64,000 nucleotides of DNA, from assembly GCF_021028975.2 (NCBI RefSeq), contig NC_059430.1:60326001-60390000 (forward strand), written 5' to 3'. This document shows, piece after piece, positions 3,784-39,319 of the stretch. The DNA is from Sphaerodactylus townsendi (Eukaryota). The notes under the pieces are model-generated. The model had not been told where the DNA came from. It did no database searches and was given only the letters and a program-made list of their open reading frames with translations. Position numbers and translations under genes: made by a program. The first letter of the stretch is position 1, and every line of letters starts with the position of its first letter.

Positions 3784-4375
3784 TTAGTCAGGAATCTGGG
3801 CAACAGGAGATAGCAATGGCACCCACCTCTCACAGGGTGAGGGCCCTGGTGGGAGGGGAGACAGTGGGGTGGCAGTGATTTGGGGGCTACATTGTTCCCC
3901 CAGCCTCATAATCACTAAGATCACCTATGGGAAATTGCTTCCTCACCATTGTGTTGTAACAGCTCCAGAAGCTGAGAAAGTATCTGCAGACCAGGGAGCC
4001 AAGGTATCATTGGCACAGGAAGAGGCCACACCCAGCTGGGGCTGTTCAGGCTGCAAATATCTGCAGCTCATTGGAACCAGGTGGCAGGAAAATGAATGGG
4101 GAGTGAACAGAAACATGTTCTAAACAAAACTGGACATAACATTTTATTTGAAGACACTGAAATTCTGGACAGTTCAGAAGATTACTATATGAGACTGCAC
4201 AGGGAGGCTATTGAAATTCACAAACACCAAGACAACTTTAACAAGAAAGAAGAGACTCTGAGAATTAACAAAGTTTGGCTACCAGTACTTAAAAATACCA
4301 GAATTAAAAGCCAAGGGTATGCTAAGTTCATGGACAATGGACTCCACCCAGACACAGGATTTGCATTCACCAATA

Positions 4376-4377
<2 letters not shown>

Positions 4378-4442
<65 letters not shown>

Positions 4443-4443
4443 A
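4378..4443 (+). repeat. (GCT)n microsatellite inside the Penelope copy
   Basis: About 22 GCT units seen directly. Confidence 0.97.
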
Positions 4444-4645
4444 GGGAATGCAAATGCAACTACAAATGTAAATGGACTAATAACCCCACCCTCAATACAA
4501 TGTACTCAACCACACCTTTGCATAGCAAGTTCCACCCAAACACTTACTGACTGGTTCCCCACCCTGGAACATGGACAATATATAACCCACTAAACATTCT
4601 CTTCTTACTAGACACAGTGTATAACAGACTTCTCTCTGTGATATA

Positions 4646-4686
4646 CCTCTGAAGATGCCAGCCACAGATGCAGGCGAAACATTAGG
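4646..4686 (+). ncRNA. Hammerhead ribozyme motif (type I, minimal; variant AUU site)
   Basis: CCU-CUGAAGA-U-GCC...GGC-GAAA-C-AUU-AGG: core intact, but the helix III ACGU palindrome is changed to ACAU. Confidence 0.7.
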
Positions 4687-5156
4687 AACAAGATCCACCA
4701 GACCATGGCCACACAGCCCGGAAAACCCACAACAACCAGTTGAACAGAAACTCTCCATGTACAGCTCCAAGGGTAGACTGCATATAGTCCTGCAGTCTCC
4801 TTTGGATCTGGTCTGATTGATGACATCAGGTGCAAGTCACACCTGCTGCATCTTGCCATGTAGCAAGATGTAGCAGCATCTTTCCATTCGCCATCCCAAA
4901 CTAGTGCTTGGGTCACTGAGGCTCTGCACCAGTTCTGGACTCAGATGGTCTCATGACAATTCTGTCTTCAAAGATCTTGCAGTTCAGATACCTATAGGTT
5001 ATGAAACAGCAAAGTCTGCAGCTCAGGAATATACCTTTATAACCTTGAAACCACTTCTGAAAGACAATTATTGGAGGGAATCTTTGCAGTGAGTGGAAAC
5101 CTCCTTCTATTGGATGAAAGCTTTGCTGTCATTGCAATGAAGTTGTTGGGTATAAT

Positions 5157-5292: not shown

Positions 5293-7675
5293 GGTATAAT
5301 CAATTGTGAAGTAGCAAAGAAAGAAACAAATAACTACATGTTCTATAGAGCTGAAGAAACATTTGAAATTCTTAATATGTTTGAGAGACAGGGAAATGTA
5401 AATGACCCTTTAAATCAATAAATATATGATTAATTAACTCTGGGATGATGCTGAATTGGCAAATATTCTACATTATTTCAATGTGTGCAATGCTTGTGCT
5501 TTAATTTTATGGTATGTTGGTAGTATCTGTTAATTAAAAATATATAAGGAAATGGTCAATGAAATCTAACCTAATCTGAGTTCACCAAGGGCAGAAATGT
5601 CAAGCTAATAATAATGTAATTATTTGAAAGCATGGTTGATTGCCTAAACAAAGAAAGTGTGATCAATCCTAGTCAATTTAATTTCGGCAAACCATTTGAT
5701 ATGTGCAGTGTAAGCAGTTTGTTTATATTGGGAGCTCATTGTTTAACATAGGTCCTATATGATTCTGACTTTTTTACACTGCTCTGAATAAACTGATAAG
5801 TAATTTTAATCTAATTCTTTAGTTGTAACAGGTTTGGGTCAAAAAGAAACTTGCCTACCCTTGATTTTTTTAAAGTTTGTTTACGCCCCTCCCCTTTTTT
5901 ATTCAGACACTGATGAGGATTTAATTTACTTTCATTCTTCTGTCTGAGTTTGTATTGCTATATTTCTTTTTATCATATGCTGCTGTTTCCTGCAGGAGGC
6001 ATGTTTGTTCTATAAAACTGTTACACTATTTCTATTATGTTAGCTGATCTGCCAAAACGTTTGCTTTTTTGTCATATTTCTTCACTAAATTGGTTCTACT
6101 CACACTTCTAGAGATGCAAAAAGAAAATAAACTTAGCAGAGTAACCTGCTTTCACCCTAATTTTATTATTTTTAACATTAAAAAGATGTAAAAGCCATCT
6201 TCTATAAGAGAAATATGAAAAAGTATTTTCAGAATTTAGACAGATAGAGAAAATGTTTTTTATTCAATTTATTTACCACATATATCTCACTTTTAACTGC
6301 AGCACATGTTTTTATGGACCAAAACCTCTTGCTGTGTAATATCATTCTCTTCAACTGTACCGTTCTTCTATTTGTGTATGCATAGGCATTCATGTACAGA
6401 GGGAATAATGTGTGGATGCTGAGCTGTGGGACATGAGAAAGTTTCTAGGAGCATTTTTGTTAGGTTTTGAAATGTGCAGAGACAAGAATATACTTGAACG
6501 ACTGCAGAAACTTCCAACAGAGCTCTGGAGATAGTGATGAGGGCACTTTAGGATGAGAGATATTTTTCCTCAATTCCAATCCAGATGTTGCAGCATTTCT
6601 TAATTGGTTAGGTATTTTTTGGCTTGGTAGGCCGTAAGTGCTGTCATGGTGATTATGTGAGACATGTAGAGCCCAGTATTTAGGTGAAATTATTGTGAGA
6701 ATGATTCCAGGTATTTGTGAGTAGGATTTGTCAATTATGCCCTGTTTATTCTTTAGCCACCTTGAGTGGATCTAGCAGTCAGCATACAAATTTTCTTAAC
6801 AGATAAAAATAAAGTTTCATCATGATCAAATCTGACTTTTTAAAATAAGGTTTAAGTTTTAATACACTAGAAAAATGCTCAGTTGACTTGCTATTAATAT
6901 ATTGTTAAACACTCCCCAAAGTTAAGAATGCAACTATGTTTATCAGAGAAGCAAAAGTGAATATACATGTACCTTGTGACCTTGGAATGGCATCCAAAAT
7001 GTGTGGTTGTACAGATGGGGTAATACTGGGGAGGGGGGGGGGAGGATATATATGTTGGAGGGTACACATTAAAAAATGAATATCTTGATTGTACACTGTC
7101 AAGGATACAGAATTTGGTCTGCATTGTGAAAGTAAGTTGATCTCTGTATTTGCAAACCAACCAATTATGACAACTTTACAGAAATTTATCTTTTGATATT
7201 ATATCAGTATTAGACGTACTGATTTCTGGTATGAATTTTGTAGATACACAATAGTGTTTACTTTCATTATTTGAAAGGAAGGTGATTCTGAATGAAAGCC
7301 AACACACCCTTGTTGGATGTAGCAATGTGCAAAGGAATTGAGATGAAGACCCAGCAAAGGGTAGGCAATTGGTCAGGGCTGTAAAGTTAGTGATCCCTCT
7401 GTCCTTTTCTGCCACCTCCTGTGTGTCCTTGAACTGATATTCTCAGGTCTAATATCCTCTTCTTCTTGAAAGTTAGTTGTAGAGACTCTTCCTAGCTAGC
7501 AAGATAGGAGCATGTTATCGTTCCCTTTTTTCTATCCTAACTGTAGTTCCTAATAACTATTTACCTTTTACCCTTTCAGTCAGTGTGTTGGCTGCTTCTC
7601 TGAGCAGTAAACTCCAATATTTTTGGTTATGGACACCAGGACTTAATTGACCTGGTTAAAAGAAAAAAGAAAACT

Positions 7676-7771
7676 GGGGTCTGTGTGGTTGCCGGGCTGT
7701 ATGGCCGTGTTCTAGCAGCATTCTCTCCTGACGTTTCGCCTGCATCTGTGGCTGGCGTCTTCATAATATCT
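7676..7771 (-). mobile_element. Penelope pLTR fragment with mutated hammerhead
   Basis: Reverse complement reads CAGAT-ATTA-TGAAGACGCCAGCCACAGATGCAGGCGAAACGTCAGGAGAGAATGC...; TSD-like GAAAACT at 7669-7675 and 7772-7778. Confidence 0.85.
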
Positions 7772-8884
7772 GAAAACTTTTTCCCCAGGTTCAGATAGCC
7801 AGGGAATAAGGACAGAGGTGTGAAGATTGGTGTCTCCTGTGGAAAGAGGTTTGCCATTCCCATGGAACTGCTAACGGTTGCAAATTTCTTAACATGGAAA
7901 TTGCATATGAAAGTGATCCTACAGCAGTAAAATTTATGGAGCTTTCTCTGAACACTGAAACCAGCTCGTTCAGATAAATACTGAAACAAACAGAATTTTA
8001 AAAACCAGAGGTATTATTATTTCATCTTTATCAGATTAATTATTGACTGAAACTTTTGAAACGGCAGCTGAGCTTTGGGAGGAGTTAGAAAAATATTTGG
8101 GAAGGAAATCTACACAAAAGTGATGTGTTTCCATTATTAACTGCTTGTTAAACAAATGCCTGAAGGGGATTATGTACTTAGCATATCAATGAAATGCTGA
8201 AGCTAATTGATCAGCTGCAGTTAACCAGTAAAGTTTTGGAAAATGATGACCTAATTCTATATTTGTTAATTTCATTGACAAAGAGCTATTTTTATAACCA
8301 TAATTAAGAGTAAAGAGAATTTAATTTTGGCACAAGTTGTTGGGGAGCTGAAAGACAAGAGCATGATGAGAAAGTTTGCCCAAAGCACAAGTGATTTGTG
8401 AGTGTTAGCTATATACAACAAGAGATCTTTACAATGTCATACATTAATAAAATTGGTCATTTTTCAAGTTAATGCCCAGACTGCACTGTAAGTCAGCATC
8501 CAGGGAGCCATTTGCATCTTAGAATGAGTGATAAAAGCTTTTGAATTCCCAGACCAGCAGTGCTGAGAGTGCAGTCAAACAGATGAAATCTGGAAAAATA
8601 AAAGCAAAAGTTGGATTTTAGGCAGTAGAAGCAGTCACCACCTCTGAAGAGATAAAAGCTTGTTTGAGTTTCTGAATCAGAGTAAAAAGGAGTTACTTGA
8701 CATTGCAAATGATGAGATGATCACAGCAGAGGGGATCGGAAGGCTGACCATAAACTGTGCTCTTTCAGGAGAATGTGTGAGAGAGATTATTATTACAGAC
8801 TGTTGATGTGTACCCTCCCTTAGAAATAATCTGATTTCTATGCTTCAACAAAGTCTTTTCCATTTCTTTTGATGACACACATTT

Positions 8885-14050: not shown

Positions 14051-15620
14051 ACCTTATTCTAAAACAGACTTTGTGTAACATTTATAATACTTTCTCTCAT
14101 TACTTTGAATGCTTTGGATTACTGGTCATTGCCTATAAAGTCATAGTAGGTATAATAATGGTAGGTTTTGGGGTTTTTTGTTTTTGCTTCTCATGAGAAA
14201 TGAATAGAAATCTGCTTCTGTTTCTGGAATTTCTCTTCGGTTTGGTGATTTGATTTGAGAGTACAAAAAAAAGGTTTTCTGTTCTTCTGTCTCCAGTGAT
14301 CATCTGCCTTTTCATCTTAGCATAATGACTAGTTTGAGGAAGCCCCTATTCACAGAGAGTGCCTCTGGAGACAGCCAGCACATCTCTTGTTGAGGCAATG
14401 TAAGTGCTTGCTACAGTGCTTTATAATTTATGTCACTTCAGCTGAAAAAGGAGATTTCTAGCAAGTTTGGGGTGGAAGAAGGAAAACAAGCCCTTTGATA
14501 ATGTTAGAGTGCAATGCACCCTTAGCAGATGGCAGTGTCAAGTGTGATTTGTACATGATTATTATTGAGTTTTAGGTGGTGCTTTATATTCTTGGTTCTT
14601 GATGAGGAGCTTCATTTGTACACATCATCATTATCTCTTGTGACATATGCTTTAGTGATATTAATCTGTGCTTTACTCCTGCAGCAATAATCATGGGGTT
14701 GTACTCATTCTTTTTATTGTGTTGTCATGCTATCTATGGTTGCATTCATGATTTCAGATACGTTTACCATATAGGGGACAGGCTGTTGCTCAATGGTGAT
14801 TTATGCACAGCAGAAATAAAACATCTTTAGGACTTTTAAAGAAACATTTTGGGAAAGACGTTCGCACAGCACTCTCCCCCAAAATGTCTTCAAAATATTT
14901 TATTTTTCTCAACCCACGTTTCTCAAAAATGGCTAAACTAGCAGTCTTCCCCCCCCCCCCCCCCCGGGTTGAAAATATTTCCTGCCTGCTGAATGATCAA
15001 AAACAGGCAGGAAAGCCTTTATCTCTCCCTCCCAAACCTCTTACTTTCATTTTTGCTGTCCACGCCTGCCATTTTATGCTGCAGCAGAGATTATCTGAAG
15101 GTTCCCCACAGAAGATTCCACTACTTGCAGCTCATCCGTGCATGATTTCCCTGGGAAAAATAGATGAATAAATTTTGTTTTGCCCAGCTACCCTGTGCGC
15201 ATGTTGTTTTACCTTTTTTGTTGTTTTGAGGGGGATCTCTGAAACTACAATGTCACAATTAGAGAAGCTGCAATATGCACATATTTGTTGTGCCTTACAG
15301 TGTGCTTCACAGACATCCCACTCAAAACAAAAAAAGTTAAAAAAGACGTGCGCAGTATCCCTTGGCAAAGCAAACTTTATTCATCAAATTTTTACACAAA
15401 AATCACATGTGGATGAGCTGCAAGCAGAGGAGATCTCTGTGGAAAACCTTCGCCAAATGACAGAGGCACGGAGAATTTCTGCAGCAGCACACAAAATGGC
15501 AGGCGCAACTGTGAAACTGACAAGAGCTCTATTCAGCAGGCAGGAAAAAAAGATTCTGACAATGTTCAATCGTAGAATGGCCAGTTTTAAAACCTAATTG
15601 GCAAGAATGGAGGATCTTGT

Positions 15621-15803
15621 CGAAGGCTTTCACGGCCGGAATCACTTGGGTGCTGTGTGGTTTCCAGGCTGTATGGCCGTGTTCTAGCAGCATTCTCTCC
15701 TGACGTTTCGCCTCTGAAGATGCCAGCCACAGATGCAGGCGAAACGTCAGGAGAGAATGCTGCTAGAACACGGCCATACAGCCCGGAAACCACACAGCAC
15801 CCA
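15621..15803. mobile_element. Palindromic non-autonomous Penelope pLTR insertion
   Basis: Minus-strand pLTR piece with tail (15621-15713) joined to a plus-strand piece (15711-15803); 15-bp TSD AATGGAGGATCTTGT (15606-15620, 15804-15818). Confidence 0.9.
15711..15751 (+). ncRNA. Hammerhead ribozyme (type I, minimal, intact core)
   Basis: Stem I CCU/AGG, CUGAAGA 15714-15720, stem II GCC/GGC, GAAA 15741-15744, GUC triplet with predicted cut after 15748. Confidence 0.85.
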
Positions 15804-15993
15804 AATGGAGGATCTTGTTATCATTAACCCAGTCCTCCAATTTGCATTTCAAAAATTTGGCATAAACTTTTGAAGCAATTGGTCTATCATTCCATGGATC
15901 ATGCTTATCACCCTTCTTATGGATGGGAACTATTAAGCTGGATGTCCAACCGCACAGTACCACCAGTGTTATTAGTTTGTGTAGAGAGGCTTG

Positions 15994-33183: not shown

Positions 33184-33885
33184 TTGCCCAAGGAGCTGCT
33201 GATACAGTTCTACAGAGGAATCATTGAGTCTGTTATCTGCACCTCTATAACTGTGTGGTTTGGTTCTGCAACCCAACAAGATCGACACAGACTTCAGAGA
33301 ATAATCAGAACTGCAGAAAAAACAATTGCTGCTAACCTGCCTTCCATTGAGGACCTGTATACTGCACGGGTCAAAAAAAGGGCTGTGAAAATATTTACTG
33401 ACCCCTCGCATCCTGGACATAAACTGTTTCAACTCTTACCCTCTAAACGTCACTACAGAGCACTGCACACCAAGACAACTAGACATAAGAACAGTTTTTT
33501 CCCGAATGCCATCACTCTGTTAAACAAATGATTCCCTCGATAATGTCAAACTATTTATTATATATTTATTATATAATTACTGCACTACTTTTTTCATCAT
33601 TCCTATTACCCATCTCCTCCCAATTATGACTGTATGACTATAGCCTGTGCTGACATTTCATTTTATTTTATGATTTTACATTTTATGTTTTTATTACTAT
33701 TGATTGTTTCCTGATTGCTTACTAGACCTATATGACAATCATTAAGTGCTGTACCTTATGATTCTTGACAAATGTATTTTCTTTTATGTACACTGAGAGC
33801 ATATGCACCGGAGACAAATTCCTTGTGTGTCCAATCACACTTGGCCAATAAAGATTCTATTCTATTCTATTCTATTCTATTCTAT
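33184..33885 (+). mobile_element. Rex1/Babar LINE, 5'-truncated, with (TTCTA)n tail
   Basis: Uninterrupted ORF FYRGIIESVICTSITVWFGS...DPSHPGHKLFQLLPSKR...NSFFP (Rex1 RT C-terminus); AATAAA then (TTCTA)n at ~33855-33885. Confidence 0.92.
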
Positions 33886-35420: not shown

Positions 35421-36292
35421 TCTCTCTGCAAGCTTGTAGGGAACTAATATTATTTGTGATTTTTGCACAAGCAAGCACTCTGAATCAGGGCTATTTCTGA
35501 ATAGTAAGCAAAATGTTCAGTATTAGACTTCAGTCTCCAGCCCAAAAATGTCAATTCCCATCCAGCTTTTGAATTCAACAAGGAAGAACAGTTTTTCTTT
35601 CCTCCAAATATATAAAGCATCTTACTTTGTCACTGGAGAATTAGAACTATTTGTTACCCAGCTTAACAGTATAAGAACTTATTTTTAAATAGCAATGGGG
35701 AACTACTCAGCTTGGCAGTGCGAGAGGCAGGCTGGGTGGGATCTTTTAGACAACTACACCAGAAAAATGGCTTGAAACGTTCTACAGAAAATTCACAAGA
35801 GGCCAAATTGCAGTTTAAATATTTTTATATAAGTTTTGATTTCCAGAAACAATCATACAGTGAGACGTTAAGGCTCATACACATAGTTCCTAAGTATATA
35901 AACGGGGGGTTTGGATGATAGAGTAGGAGGGGAAGCAGGGGACTTATACGTTACCTAAATTCAGCTGAAGAAGACAAGGATCTCTATGCCAGCTTGGGGA
36001 CCCAAGCGAAGGATGATATATCGTGTCTCCAACCAACTATATCAAGAGAGGTTTAGCCAGTAAAGAGCTCTGAGGCTATGGTGCACAATACTTTTATACC
36101 TTTTTGCGCAGGTAGGGGTGGGCTCAGGTAAGTTTCAGTTTCATTTTCCTGCATCTGTTGGGATTTCCCATGCTGGGTTTGCTGGCTTGAGCTAATTAGT
36201 AGCTCTGTATATTGTCGAAGGCTTTCACAGCTGGAATCAGTGGGGTGCTGTGTGGTTTCTGGGCTGTATGGCCGTGTTCTAGCAGCATTCTC

Positions 36293-36335
36293 TCCTGATG
36301 TTTCGCCTGTATCTGTGGCTGTCATCTTCAGAGGA
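36293..36335 (-). ncRNA. Hammerhead ribozyme motif, degenerate
   Basis: UCCU-CUGAAGA-U-GAC...GGC-GAAA-C-AUC-AGGA: stem II mismatch and lost ACGU palindrome. Confidence 0.6.
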
Positions 36336-36349
36336 TCTGAATCTTCAGA

Positions 36350-36392
36350 TCCTCTGAAGATGCCAGCCACAGATGCAGGCGAAACGTCAGGA
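36350..36392 (+). ncRNA. Hammerhead ribozyme (type I, minimal, intact core)
   Basis: Stem I UCCU/AGGA, CUGAAGA 36354-36360, stem II GCC(A)GC/GC(A)GGC, GAAA 36381-36384, GUC with predicted cut after 36388. Confidence 0.87.
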
Positions 36393-39319
36393 GAGAATGC
36401 TGCTAGACATGGCCATATAGCCCGGAAACCACACAGAACCCCAGGAGCTCTATAGTTTCTAAGTGTTGGGATAATAGAGTCAATTGTTCCTTGATTACAT
36501 CGGGAGCTCTGAAAGGCTTTATGCAGAGTAAGTCCTTGGAGTTCCTGCTCAGGTATTCAATTTGGGTGAGGCTTTGATTGGATCAGGAAGGGATTGATTT
36601 TTAGGGAGATCGTATCTAGAGGTAGAGGAAATGCAAGGAAGGAGCAATTGTTGATGAAATGGTTTCTCAAAGGTAGATTAAATATAACGTCTAGTATCAG
36701 GGAGTCTTCCAGGATTCATTGGATCAGAACAGCTTAGCGGGGTGTGGTAATCAAGATATGTCCATGGTCCATGAGGCTTCCAGCTCCTATTGCCTGGAGT
36801 AACTCATTCACTGATTTAATCTTGCAAACAGACCTTTTGCCTTAGGCCTGCTTTTAGGGTGGACACTCTGCTACCTACACACACAAATGTGAGAATTGGC
36901 TTTTACCAATACAGCTGTACAGAAAAATGATATGGAATCTATATTTCAATAGAGCGGGGTATGAAGGGCAGGGCTAACATAGCTTAGAGCTGAATCTTGT
37001 TCAATAATGTTCCTTCTTAGGACCTCATCTTCTGTTAGAGGTAGTAGGAAACAGTTAAGTCAATTTTTGTGTAGAAAGGAGCTGTTGAATTCTTTAATAC
37101 AGAGGTGGAACACGAACTTTTTAGATCTAGACGTGCAGCCAGATCTCTATAAGAGTTGATAGGCTTCAAGACACTGGTGGGGGCATTTCTTCCACATCAG
37201 CTTTCATAACTTGCTGCAGGTGTGCATTGTTTTTATATTTGAAAATAACATCATGAGAGTTATATTGTTTCCTGAGTATCACTAACATATTGACATCTCA
37301 CCAGGATATCATCCTGCTGATCTAGAAGGAAGTGTTTTTAAGGAAATCCAATACTGGATGTTGCAAAGTGTCAAAGATTTATGGTACACCTTAACTTACC
37401 ACATTGCTAACTACATAACCTACCACAAAAGCTAAATTATATGGATTAAAGTATCATCGATATGCAGATCATACTAATCTGTTTATGTTTTCAACAGAAT
37501 CTGATGAGTTGTTTGTTTATTACATGTTTTGACTGCCTCCTCTTCAAAGTGTTCAGGGTGGTATGCATGGTTCTCCATGACTCATGACCAGAGTGCAATT
37601 TTTATGCCCTGTTTTTAACTTGTGGTTTAGGGAGCATTCAAGAATAATGTTGCACATATTAAAGGTTAAGAATAACAATTAACAGCATAAGAGACAGTAG
37701 GGAAAGGGAAAATATGAAAGAATGGGGGAGGCAAGAAAAACAAAAGCAAATAATTATGTTTAATTTAAGGTTAAAATTGTCAGTTGCAGCTGGAAACCCA
37801 TAGGAGCTACTCGCAGGGGTGGGTGGGTAGGAACAGTTGTACTAGCATCATGGCAACATGCAAAATCACTACCAGTACAAAACCATCATCATTGTGTTAG
37901 GGTAGTGCTCTAGAATTTGCCCAAATTCTGTGGTTAAACATGGCATTTTAAACAAATCCTTGATCATTCCTTCTGGACATTGGGAGCTGAGCTCCAGTTT
38001 CTCTCCTGCACAGTCACATGTGAAGCTGCAGTGGGGAACCGGGGCTATAATGGGAGTCATGCTCCCCATATTTTAGTCCAGGAATACTCTTTGTTAAATG
38101 GTTCTGCAAACTTTAAATGTTGTCTTCGACTGCTCTTAGTTAGATTTGTGTCCGTTACATGTCAAAACCTAAACCGTCTTACTGAACAAGTACATCCAAT
38201 TTGTGCTGATAAAAATGTAATCAGAAAAGAAATATATGAAAGAGAAATATATAATATATAAAAGAATATAATATTCTTAAATGTCAAGATCAATATTTTG
38301 TTCTACAGAATGACTGCATTTGAATTTCATCCAACAGTTTGTCACTTAAGATGAATAGTTAAAATTAACATGTATGATTATAACTACCTAACATTAAAAT
38401 TAAATGCTTATTTCTCAGACAAGCTCATGAAGTCCACTATGAGAAAAGAGCCAGCTAATTTTACATTTTTATACTTCCCTCGGTTATGATTGATGTTACG
38501 ATTCTTGTATATAATAGGTTAACGTAGTTTGCTGTTTTCTCCCAGCATGGAGCTTTCATTGTTGGTGTTTTCTCTTTGGGAAACCAGCACTAACATTTTG
38601 GCGTAGTCACTCTGTGACTAGCATTTTACTGAGAACAAATAGGAATTTGGAGAGTTTGGAATTTGAACATCTATAAGAAAATGGACATATAAGCAGTTTG
38701 TAGACATATAATCAGTTGTTTGAGGGATTGAGCATTGAATAGATTAATAATGCTGTCCTGCAAAGATGAATCTCTCTTGAGAATGAGATTTTAATTAAAA
38801 CCTACACAGATATGTGTCGTAGTTCCATTGGTTTGAGCATGCTGCCCTCTGCCTACAAAGTATAAAAACATTCTCTGCTGTTCATATTTTTCCTACAAAC
38901 CTTGAGATGAACAAAGGACCTCAGTATTTTTCTGTCATCATAAAAACCTCTGTTTTTGAATTCTGTGTGAGAGCATCCTTCAACTGGAAATGAAATACTA
39001 CCAAATTCAAAAGCTGCATTGCAGTGTTGTGGATTATTGTCTTAATTGAGGACATGCCTTCATTGAGGACATGTTCTTGTCCTGCCTTGTGGCTGTGTGT
39101 AACCTGTTGTTATTAGCATTGTAATGGCAGCCATAATCTGATAAATAATTATTTCAATAAAGGAAGATGAAACAGTTGGGCAAATACAGATGCAAGGAGA
39201 TATTGCTTCAAAGGTCGAGGCTGCAACAGCCAAAAGAAGTTAGAGATGCGAAGGCATTAAAAGGAAACTTTGTGTTTTGTTGAGCTTTCATTTGACTTAA
39301 ATCACTAGGAATTTCCAAA

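What the first reader, a model, noticed from the sequence alone, without database searches (positions are those of the whole stretch)
36211..36445. Head-to-head double-hammerhead mini-retroelement (Penelope-derived, non-coding)
Seen: a ~235-bp insertion made of two inverted copies of the same pLTR segment, each carrying a hammerhead core. The + copy is intact: UCCU-CUGAAGA-U-GCC..GGC-GAAA-C-GUC-AGGA, predicted cut after 36388. The - copy is degenerate. There is no ORF. Established: Penelope-like elements carry minimal type I hammerheads in their pLTRs, and they often have an inverted, tail-less pLTR piece at the 5' end. Inference: this is a ribozyme-only, SINE/retrozyme-like unit mobilised in trans. 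A read-through transcript from either strand would contain a hammerhead motif, and the ~100-bp arms could fold back and mask it, giving competition between self-cleavage and dsRNA formation.
Basis: partly seen in the sequence, partly recalled or inferred. Interest (0 to 1): 0.85.

Follow-up and report, generated by a model that had tools for sequence, protein, structure and literature searches.

The report
Fold-back Penelope retrotransposon fragment with hammerhead
This 235-bp palindrome is a real but ordinary dead-end insertion of a Penelope-like (Poseidon-type) retrotransposon: two short end-pieces joined head to head, one still carrying an intact hammerhead ribozyme motif that the fold-back hairpin would bury.

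Summary
Two inverted arms (36241-36341 and 36344-36443, 91% complementary) form an insertion with an imperfect 12-bp target duplication. The + arm carries a complete minimal type-I hammerhead motif (36350-36392, cut after 36388). The - arm copy has three lesions.

The arms are homologous to nt -17 to +85/+114 of the published Anolis Poseidon_Ac element. [quoted passage not shown] The right end stops at about +85. The left end runs on about 30 nt to +114. These are the two internal reverse-transcription start sites ("tail") mapped in vitro for that element, whose protein nicks and extends both DNA strands.

The best reading is therefore a doubly 5'-truncated, dead-on-arrival insertion made by convergent priming from both strands. 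It is not a self-propagating ribozyme mini-element:
- The second palindrome in the window has a different inner junction.
- Contigs of three related genomes show hundreds of different head-to-head junctions.
- The arms lack the RNA region that the enzyme needs in vitro.

A read-through RNA folds into a -198 kcal/mol hairpin, against -8 kcal/mol for the ribozyme fold. The scan has noted the same kind of element at several other places in this genome. Already known kind; low interest.

The parts
36199..36210 (.). Left copy of the target-site duplication (imperfect; 9 of 12 letters match 36444-36455)
   Evidence: Read directly. table 5c shows contigs of a related genome that join 36206 to 36449 with one letter between. 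These are copies of the flanking repeat that lack the insertion.
36211..36240 (-). 'Tail': about 30 nt present only on this arm, corresponding to about nt +86 to +114 of the PLE ORF and ending ...GCCTTCGACAA on the - strand
   Evidence: Alignment of arms. Read by eye against Poseidon_Ac nt 85-114. The tail is defined as about nt 85-119 in PMC11167929 Fig. S2.
36241..36341 (-). Left arm, sense on the - strand: PLE nt -17 to +85
36293..36335 (-). Decayed hammerhead copy. Both catalytic boxes are intact, helix II has 2 changes, and GUC has become AUC, so the ACGU palindrome for helix III in trans is lost. The nominal cut lies between 36297 and 36296 on the - strand.
   Evidence: The consensus letters at 36299, 36310 and 36322 come table 3.
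36342..36343 (.). 2-nt centre between the arms (36343 may belong to the right arm)
36344..36443 (+). Right arm, sense on the + strand: PLE nt -17 to about +85, tail-less
36350..36392 (+). Complete minimal type-I hammerhead motif. Helix I is 36350-36353/36389-36392. The CUGAAGA box is 36354-36360, followed by unpaired U 36361. Helix II is 36362-36380. GAAA is 36381-36384, CG is 36385-36386, and UC is 36387-36388. The cut falls after 36388.
   Evidence: The layout matches the published PAc HHR.
36360..36362 (+). ATG of the truncated PLE ORF, at the start of stem II. The cut site lies 26 nt after the codon.
   Evidence: translation (MPATDAGETSGENAA...). This matches the statement for PAc in PMC11167929.
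36444..36455 (.). Right copy of the target-site duplication

Best explanation
This is a dead-on-arrival, doubly 5'-truncated insertion of a Poseidon-clade Penelope-like retrotransposon.

Inferred steps:
1. The element's GIY-YIG endonuclease made a staggered break, which left the roughly 12-bp target duplication.
2. Both exposed 3'-OH ends primed reverse transcription on PLE RNA. One started at the outer internal start site (about +114, giving the left end with the tail). The other started at the inner site (about +85, giving the tail-less right end).
3. Both cDNAs stopped just upstream of the hammerhead (-17) and were joined head to head.

The hammerhead motifs are passengers, because they overlap the first codons of the PLE ORF. 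The unit has no coding capacity and lacks the RNA segment the enzyme needs, so it does not propagate. It has since decayed by about 4-5% per arm.

If transcribed as part of a longer RNA, it forms a roughly 100-bp hairpin that hides the intact + strand ribozyme.

Shown: the anatomy, the homology, the end positions, the heterogeneity of junctions and the folding energies. Inferred: the order of priming and joining events.
For: 1. Homology to Poseidon_Ac, read by eye. The first about 114 nt and 25 of 38 N-terminal residues match. The ATG/stem II/cut-site geometry is identical.

2. The ends fall at about +85 and about +114, which are the two RT start sites and tail boundaries of PAc. The second palindrome in the window has the same tail-on-one-end pattern.

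3. The PAc protein cleaves and extends both DNA strands in vitro.

4. An inverted 5'-truncated copy and a 30-40-bp tail at one end are described as typical of PLE insertions (PMC8557442). Dual min-HHRs on opposite strands, 100-700 bp apart, were seen in Schistosoma.

5. Junctions differ between copies. Here both arms end at -17. At 15620-15803 the antisense arm ends at about +19 and the sense arm at about -9, with 2-nt microhomology and a perfect 14-bp TSD. One search gives 649 different joints across the centre in contigs of three related genomes, with left-arm breakpoints spread over 36267-36298.

6. The arms are 91% alike to each other and 93-94% alike to a near-consensus copy. This is star-like decay. 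The other palindrome's arms match at 61/62, so it is a separate, younger event.

7. PAc needs the first 172 nt of the ORF as template in vitro. These arms stop at +85/+114.
Against: - Both arms end at the same nucleotide (-17). Two independent truncations would rarely do this. It suggests a defined stop or a template-jump point, or that one arm was copied from the other.
- The TSD is imperfect (9/12).
- The PAc biochemistry comes from a related family, not this one, and the in-vitro work did not show the joined head-to-head product.
- No full-length copy of this subfamily lies in the window.
- The contig 'joints' come from short unitigs of repeats in related species, at 88% likeness. They show variety but give no clean census.
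Confidence: 0.8

Rival explanations
1. One reading: the palindrome is a non-autonomous, ribozyme-only retroelement family (SINE- or retrozyme-like) that is transcribed, self-cleaves, and is copied in trans by PLE enzymes.
For: - The arm sequences are extremely abundant in three related genomes (33,000-84,000 contigs laid) and are transcribed.
- Many TSD-flanked palindromic copies are noted across this genome (unchecked notes).
- Animal retrozymes are proposed to derive from PLE pLTRs.
- Sense arms tend to begin at the same place.
Against: - Junctions and lengths differ between copies (noted lengths 213-287).
- A transcript holds only one sense hammerhead, so no unit-length RNA can be released.
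- The arms lack ORF nt +115 to +172, which the template needs in vitro.
- The hairpin (-198.5 kcal/mol) buries the ribozyme.
- RNA reads show no pile-up of ends at 36388/36389, as also reported for Anolis.
- The abundance is explained by ordinary PLE copies and fragments that share the arm sequence.
Confidence: 0.06
2. Same dead-end origin, but formed by snap-back. A single cDNA primed at the left end folded back on itself at -17 and copied itself to make the second arm.
For: - The centre is symmetric, with only 2 nt between the arms.
- The region -17 to -1 is itself a small hairpin (CUUCAGAUCCUCUGAAG, arm-alone fold) that could favour fold-back.
Against: - The right arm stops exactly at the canonical inner RT start site (about +85), like solo tail-less copies such as 7674-7776. 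It does not stop at a random point or at the tail end.
- The second palindrome is asymmetric at its centre.
- The enzyme is shown to extend both strands.
Confidence: 0.1
3. The fold-back has been taken over by the host as a hairpin-RNA gene (miRNA/endo-siRNA precursor or ADAR substrate).
For: - The hairpin is near-perfect and about 100 bp long.
- Generic miRNA models give sub-threshold hits.
- In the RNA run, A>G and T>C places exceed those in a DNA run of the same species label (15 vs 5 and 19 vs 12), while other classes are equal.
Against: - All Rfam hits are far below gathering scores (31-41 bits against 66-100).
- The arms are decaying neutrally and independently.
- There are no small-RNA data, and the RNA reads cannot be assigned to this locus.
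Confidence: 0.03

Closest known systems
Poseidon_Ac (PAc), the Penelope-like element of Anolis carolinensis (Arkhipova 2006; Frangieh et al. 2024, PMC11167929)
   Same: - The hammerhead overlaps the ORF start: the ATG is at stem II and the cut lies 26 nt after the ATG.
- The N-terminal peptide matches (25/38 residues by eye).
- Insertion ends fall at about +85 and about +114 (the tail).
- The enzyme cleaves and extends both strands, which accounts for inverted pieces.
   Different: - This is a different subfamily, roughly 80% alike over the first 114 nt by eye. The core box is CUGAAGA rather than CUGAGGA, and helix II has an A.A mismatch where PAc has U.G.
- Only about 100-130 nt per arm is present here, with no RT or EN.
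The complex tandem/inverted insertion structure of PLEs (Evgen'ev & Arkhipova 2005; Craig et al. 2021, PMC8557442)
   Same: An inverted 5'-truncated copy next to a sense copy, a 30-40-bp tail at one end only, and a TSD.
   Different: This is the extreme short case. Both copies are truncated to the last about 100-130 nt, so nothing lies between the inverted pieces.
Minimal PLE hammerheads (Cervera & de la Pena 2014, PMC4209133; Lunse et al. 2017, cited in PMC6765202)
   Same: Both catalytic boxes, the extra nucleotide before helix II, the G10.1-C11.1 pair, a short helix I, no helix III but a palindromic ACGU that can pair in trans, and occurrence on opposite strands close together.
   Different: Activity has not been tested here. 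No Rfam hammerhead model recognises it.
Non-LTR retrozymes of animals (Cervera & de la Pena 2020, PMC7229834; Li et al. 2026 preprint)
   Same: Short, non-coding, hammerhead-bearing and related to PLE ends.
   Different: Retrozymes are head-to-tail tandem repeats with canonical type-I hammerheads that release and circularise a monomer. Here the copies are head to head, so a transcript has one sense ribozyme only.
Twin-priming inversions of L1 (Ostertag & Kazazian 2001; from my own knowledge, not checked here)
   Same: Both strands of the target break prime reverse transcription, which gives an inverted, 5'-truncated structure with a TSD.
   Different: In L1 the second priming is internal on the same RNA and gives an inversion with a deletion, not two copies of the same 3' segment. 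PLEs also start at fixed internal sites.

Membership tests
Penelope-like element (Poseidon clade) insertion | Sequence homology to a curated PLE | tested here: met
   The arms match nt 1-114 and the 3' end of Poseidon_Ac, and the peptide matches at 25/38 residues.
Penelope-like element (Poseidon clade) insertion | Insertion ends at the internal RT start sites, with an optional 30-40-bp tail at one end | tested here: met
   The right end is at about +85 and the left end at about +114. The palindrome at 15620-15803 shows the same pattern.
Penelope-like element (Poseidon clade) insertion | Target-site duplication | tested here: met
   36199-36210 matches 36444-36455 at 9/12 letters. The sister copy has a perfect 14-bp TSD, 15606-15619 / 15804-15817.
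Penelope-like element (Poseidon clade) insertion | RT plus GIY-YIG endonuclease ORF | tested here: not met
   Only the first 28-38 codons are present, so this is a fragment and not an element. A PLE endonuclease C-terminus of a sister subfamily lies at 4096-4320 (41/59 residues match PAc by eye; no Pfam hit).
Minimal PLE hammerhead (min-HHR) | CUGANGA and GAAA boxes, an NUH cleavage triplet, an unpaired nt between positions 9 and 10.1, and a G10.1-C11.1 pair | tested here: met
   Met by the + arm at 36350-36392. The - arm keeps the boxes but has helix II and 16.2 lesions.
Minimal PLE hammerhead (min-HHR) | Palindromic 15.2-16.2, allowing helix III in trans (dimer) | tested here: met
   ACGU at 36384-36387 in the + arm. 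The - arm has ACAU, so the feature is not met there.
Minimal PLE hammerhead (min-HHR) | Self-cleavage | not testable with these tools
   The PAc motif cleaves only with PAc protein in vitro. RNA reads show no end pile-up at 36388/9, which is a weak test.
Rfam hammerhead families | Score against the covariance models | tested here: not met
   No hammerhead hit at gathering score or at E<=10. This is expected for motifs that lack helix III.
Non-LTR retrozyme | Head-to-tail tandem repeats, each with a hammerhead on the same strand | tested here: not met
   The copies are inverted and there is no direct tandem.
Propagating non-autonomous (SINE-like) family | Copies at different sites share the same internal structure and junction | tested here: not met
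   The two in-window palindromes differ in junction. One search shows 649 different joints in related genomes. A full census of this genome was not possible.
Propagating non-autonomous (SINE-like) family | Holds the RNA segment that the mobilising enzyme recognises | tested here: not met
   The arms end at +85/+114, while PAc needs up to +172 in vitro. This is an inference across subfamilies.

The most novel reading that the evidence does not exclude
Fold-back PLE fragments such as this one, which are scattered through introns, may act as a standing source of long hairpin RNA. That RNA could be edited by ADAR or diced into small RNAs that target active Poseidon elements. Separately, the clustering of sense-arm 5' ends at -17 to -6 may mark a defined template-jump step of PLE integration that has not been described.
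Probability: 0.1. Interest if true: 0.45.

Novelty: already known. Interest (0 to 1): 0.13.

Why it matters
It matters little as a discovery. It is a routine relic of a known retrotransposon class, and its shape follows from published PLE biochemistry.

It is useful in two smaller ways:
- As an annotation rule: short TSD-flanked palindromes with back-to-back hammerhead motifs in squamate genomes are PLE fold-back fragments, not a new ribozyme element.
- As natural evidence that both strands of a PLE target break prime cDNA from the two mapped start sites.

Tried and rejected
- Rfam search of the whole window at gathering score, of 461 nt at E<=10 and of the 60-nt motif at E<=10 gave no hammerhead family. 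The palindrome gave only sub-threshold miRNA-hairpin hits, and the 60-nt motif only a chance RydC hit. These were rejected as generic hairpin or chance matches.
- A Pfam scan of the PLE C-terminal ORF piece at 4096-4380 gave no family. Homology was instead read against the published PAc protein.
- BLAST of the flanks against the window found no paralogue or empty site inside the window.
- nhmmer with an arm profile found no copies beyond the four loci already seen.
- The sequencing-run search found no holder on record as RNA. The best holders share only about half of the sampled words, so these are related species or low coverage. Contigs could not show whether this exact insertion is shared between species, because no piece spans the whole stretch.
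- A transcription start at -17 was considered as the reason for the common arm end. RNA reads mostly continue upstream and no starts pile up there, so it is not supported.
- Simple snap-back was considered and rated low (see rival explanations).
- A computed alignment to the Poseidon_Ac consensus was left out, because that sequence exists here only as text in a paper supplement and has no reference.
Full report
**What is there**

The stretch 36211-36445 is a palindrome. The repeat finder gives arms 36278-36341/36344-36407 (64 nt, 95% complementary) and 36241-36277/36407-36443 (37 nt, 89%), with 2 nt at the centre. Over the whole arms, 93 of 102 positions agree. The left arm has about 30 extra nt at its outer end (36211-36240) that the right arm lacks. 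The flanks carry an imperfect direct repeat, 36199-36210 against 36444-36455, with 9 of 12 letters matching. Contigs of a related genome join 36206 to 36449 with one letter between (table 5c). The flanks themselves are moderately repeated there, so these are copies of the flanking repeat without the insertion. That supports the insertion boundaries.

**The hammerhead**

On the + strand, 36350-36392 has every feature of the minimal type-I hammerhead that Cervera and de la Pena described for Penelope-like elements:
- helix I of 4 bp (36350-36353 with 36389-36392);
- CUGAAGA (36354-36360);
- one unpaired U (36361);
- helix II closed by G10.1-C11.1 (36362-36380; 3 bp, an A.A mismatch, then 2 bp);
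- GAAA (36381-36384);
- no helix III, but a palindromic ACGU (36384-36387) that can pair in trans;
- the GUC triplet ending at 36388.

A descriptor written here finds it as the only complete hit on either strand of the window, with none in 200 simulated windows.

The - strand copy (36293-36335) keeps both boxes. It has two helix II changes, and G16.2 is changed to A. All three are private to this copy: most family reads carry the consensus letter at 36322 and 36310, and at 36299 most RNA reads do, though only about a third of the DNA contig depth (table 3).

No Rfam hammerhead model scores it, even on the 60-nt motif alone. This is expected for motifs without helix III. Membership therefore rests on the descriptor and on homology, not on a curated model.

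**What it comes from**

The arms are not anonymous pLTR. From the ATG at 36360 each arm reads as an open frame, MPATDAGETSGENAA.... The supplement of Frangieh et al. 2024 prints the Poseidon_Ac consensus of Anolis carolinensis. Its first about 114 nt, and the last letters before its ATG, are plainly homologous to the arms. The peptides agree at 25 of 38 residues (read by eye).

[quoted passage not shown] The same holds here: ATG at 36360-36362, cut after 36388.

The paper also shows that reverse transcription starts at two internal sites, and that the roughly 34-nt 'tail' seen in a fraction of genomic copies is the stretch between them, about nt 85-119. Here the right arm ends at about +85. 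The left arm runs on to ...GCCTTCGACAA, which is about +114 of the consensus. So the - strand arm is the tail-bearing one, and the intact + arm is the tail-less inverted piece.

Elsewhere in the window, a 5'-truncated PLE of a sister subfamily ends at 4646-4740 with the same hammerhead core. It is preceded by the C-terminus of a GIY-YIG endonuclease ORF (4096-4320; 41 of 59 residues match PAc by eye).

**How it formed**

Craig et al. 2021 describe, as typical for PLE insertions, heavy 5' truncation, an inverted 5'-truncated copy next to the sense copy, and a 30-40-bp tail at one end only. Frangieh et al. show that the PAc protein, unlike R2 or L1 proteins, cleaves and extends both DNA strands.

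The simplest account is therefore that both 3'-OH ends of a staggered break primed cDNA, one at each start site, and that the two short cDNAs were joined head to head. This last step is inferred.

A pure snap-back of one cDNA is less likely. The right arm stops exactly at the canonical inner start site, as the solo tail-less copy 7674-7776 does. Also, the second palindrome is asymmetric at its centre.

**Is it a propagating mini-element?**

They do not.
- The other palindrome in the window (15620-15803, perfect 14-bp TSD) has its antisense arm cut at about +19, inside the ribozyme, and its sense arm starting at about -9, with 2-nt microhomology. Here both arms start at -17.
- That copy's arms match at 61 of 62 positions, against 91% here, so the two are separate events of different age.
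- Contigs of three related genomes were laid on the locus at 88% likeness. They give 33,000-84,000 matching contigs and 649 different joints. The best-supported ones link variable left-arm positions (36267-36298) to the start of the right arm.
- The notes of this scan list further palindromic copies elsewhere in this genome, with lengths of 213-287 bp and TSDs of 12-15 bp. One of them was already judged an ordinary fold-back PLE fragment by another follow-up. These are unchecked notes, used as leads only.
- PAc needs the first 172 nt of its ORF as template in vitro. These arms stop at +85/+114.
- A head-to-head unit has only one sense ribozyme per transcript, so it cannot release a unit-length RNA as retrozymes do.

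**RNA behaviour**

The + strand RNA of the element folds into a nearly perfect hairpin of -198.5 kcal/mol (-176.1 for the - strand). The hammerhead-compatible fold of the motif is worth -8.4 kcal/mol, and the free motif prefers another fold at -11.7.

On the + transcript the antisense arm is made first, so the ribozyme strand can zip onto it as it emerges. Masking is real, but the 'competition' is one-sided (inference from the energies).

RNA reads of a related species cover the arm family on both read orientations at about 1,800-fold in the ribozyme bins. They show no pile-up of ends at 36388/36389. This agrees with the absence of such ends in Anolis RNA-seq, although it is a weak test. The PAc ribozyme cleaved in vitro only when PAc protein was added.

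**Left unexplained**

Sense arms tend to begin just upstream of the ribozyme. The positions are -17 twice here, about -14 to -17 at 7674-7776, -9 at 15709, and 36344-36354 in all 15 best-supported joints. RNA reads do not support a transcription start there.

A strong stop or template-jump point at the small hairpin CUUCAGAUCCUCUGAAG is possible. So is alignment bias, because the reference arm ends at 36343.

The RNA run also has more A>G and T>C places than a DNA run of the same species label (15 vs 5 and 19 vs 12), with the other classes equal. This is a hint of A-to-I editing of fold-back RNA, but the two runs are not from the same animal.

**Verdict**

The origin and the masking idea are right. 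The claim of a new self-propagating ribozyme mini-element is not supported. This is an already known kind of PLE relic.

Noticed in passing
window 15606-15817: A second, younger palindromic PLE fragment (15620-15803). It has a perfect 14-bp TSD and arms matching at 61/62. The antisense arm is cut inside the hammerhead at about +19 and the sense arm starts at about -9, with 2-nt microhomology at the joint. The tail is on the left end only.
   Followed up: yes
window 7674-7776 (- strand): A solo tail-less arm (-14/-17 to +85) with a short possible TSD (AGTTTTC). Its CUGAAGA box is mutated (AUGAAGA) and its ATG has become ACG.
   Followed up: partly
window 4096-4740: A 5'-truncated PLE of a sister subfamily. 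It comprises the endonuclease C-terminus (4096-4320), a pLTR holding a (CTG)n microsatellite at about 4378-4443, then the same hammerhead core. The triplet is AUU and 15.2/16.2 are unpaired. It ends at about +85 to +90.
   Followed up: partly
window 36100-36210 and 36446-36560: The flanks of the insertion are themselves repeated in three related genomes: summed contig depth runs in the thousands, with 14-43 variant contigs. The PLE fragment therefore landed in an older repeat of unknown type. No paralogue lies in this window.
   Followed up: partly
window 36211-36445, RNA run X11 against DNA run X5: There is an excess of A>G (15 vs 5) and T>C (19 vs 12) variant places in RNA reads over DNA contigs of the same species label, with other classes equal. 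This may reflect A-to-I editing of fold-back PLE RNA. The runs are not from the same individual.
   Followed up: no
window 36344-36360 and its mirror 36325-36341: The 17 nt upstream of the ATG form a small hairpin (7-bp stem). It pairs away most of the CUGAAGA box in the arm-alone fold and coincides with the common 5' end of sense arms.
   Followed up: partly
window 33184-33531 (+): A 115-aa ORF (…FYRGIIESVICTSITVWFG…HKNSFFPNAITLLN) looks, from memory, like the C-terminal region of a non-LTR retrotransposon protein common in fish and reptile genomes.
   Followed up: no
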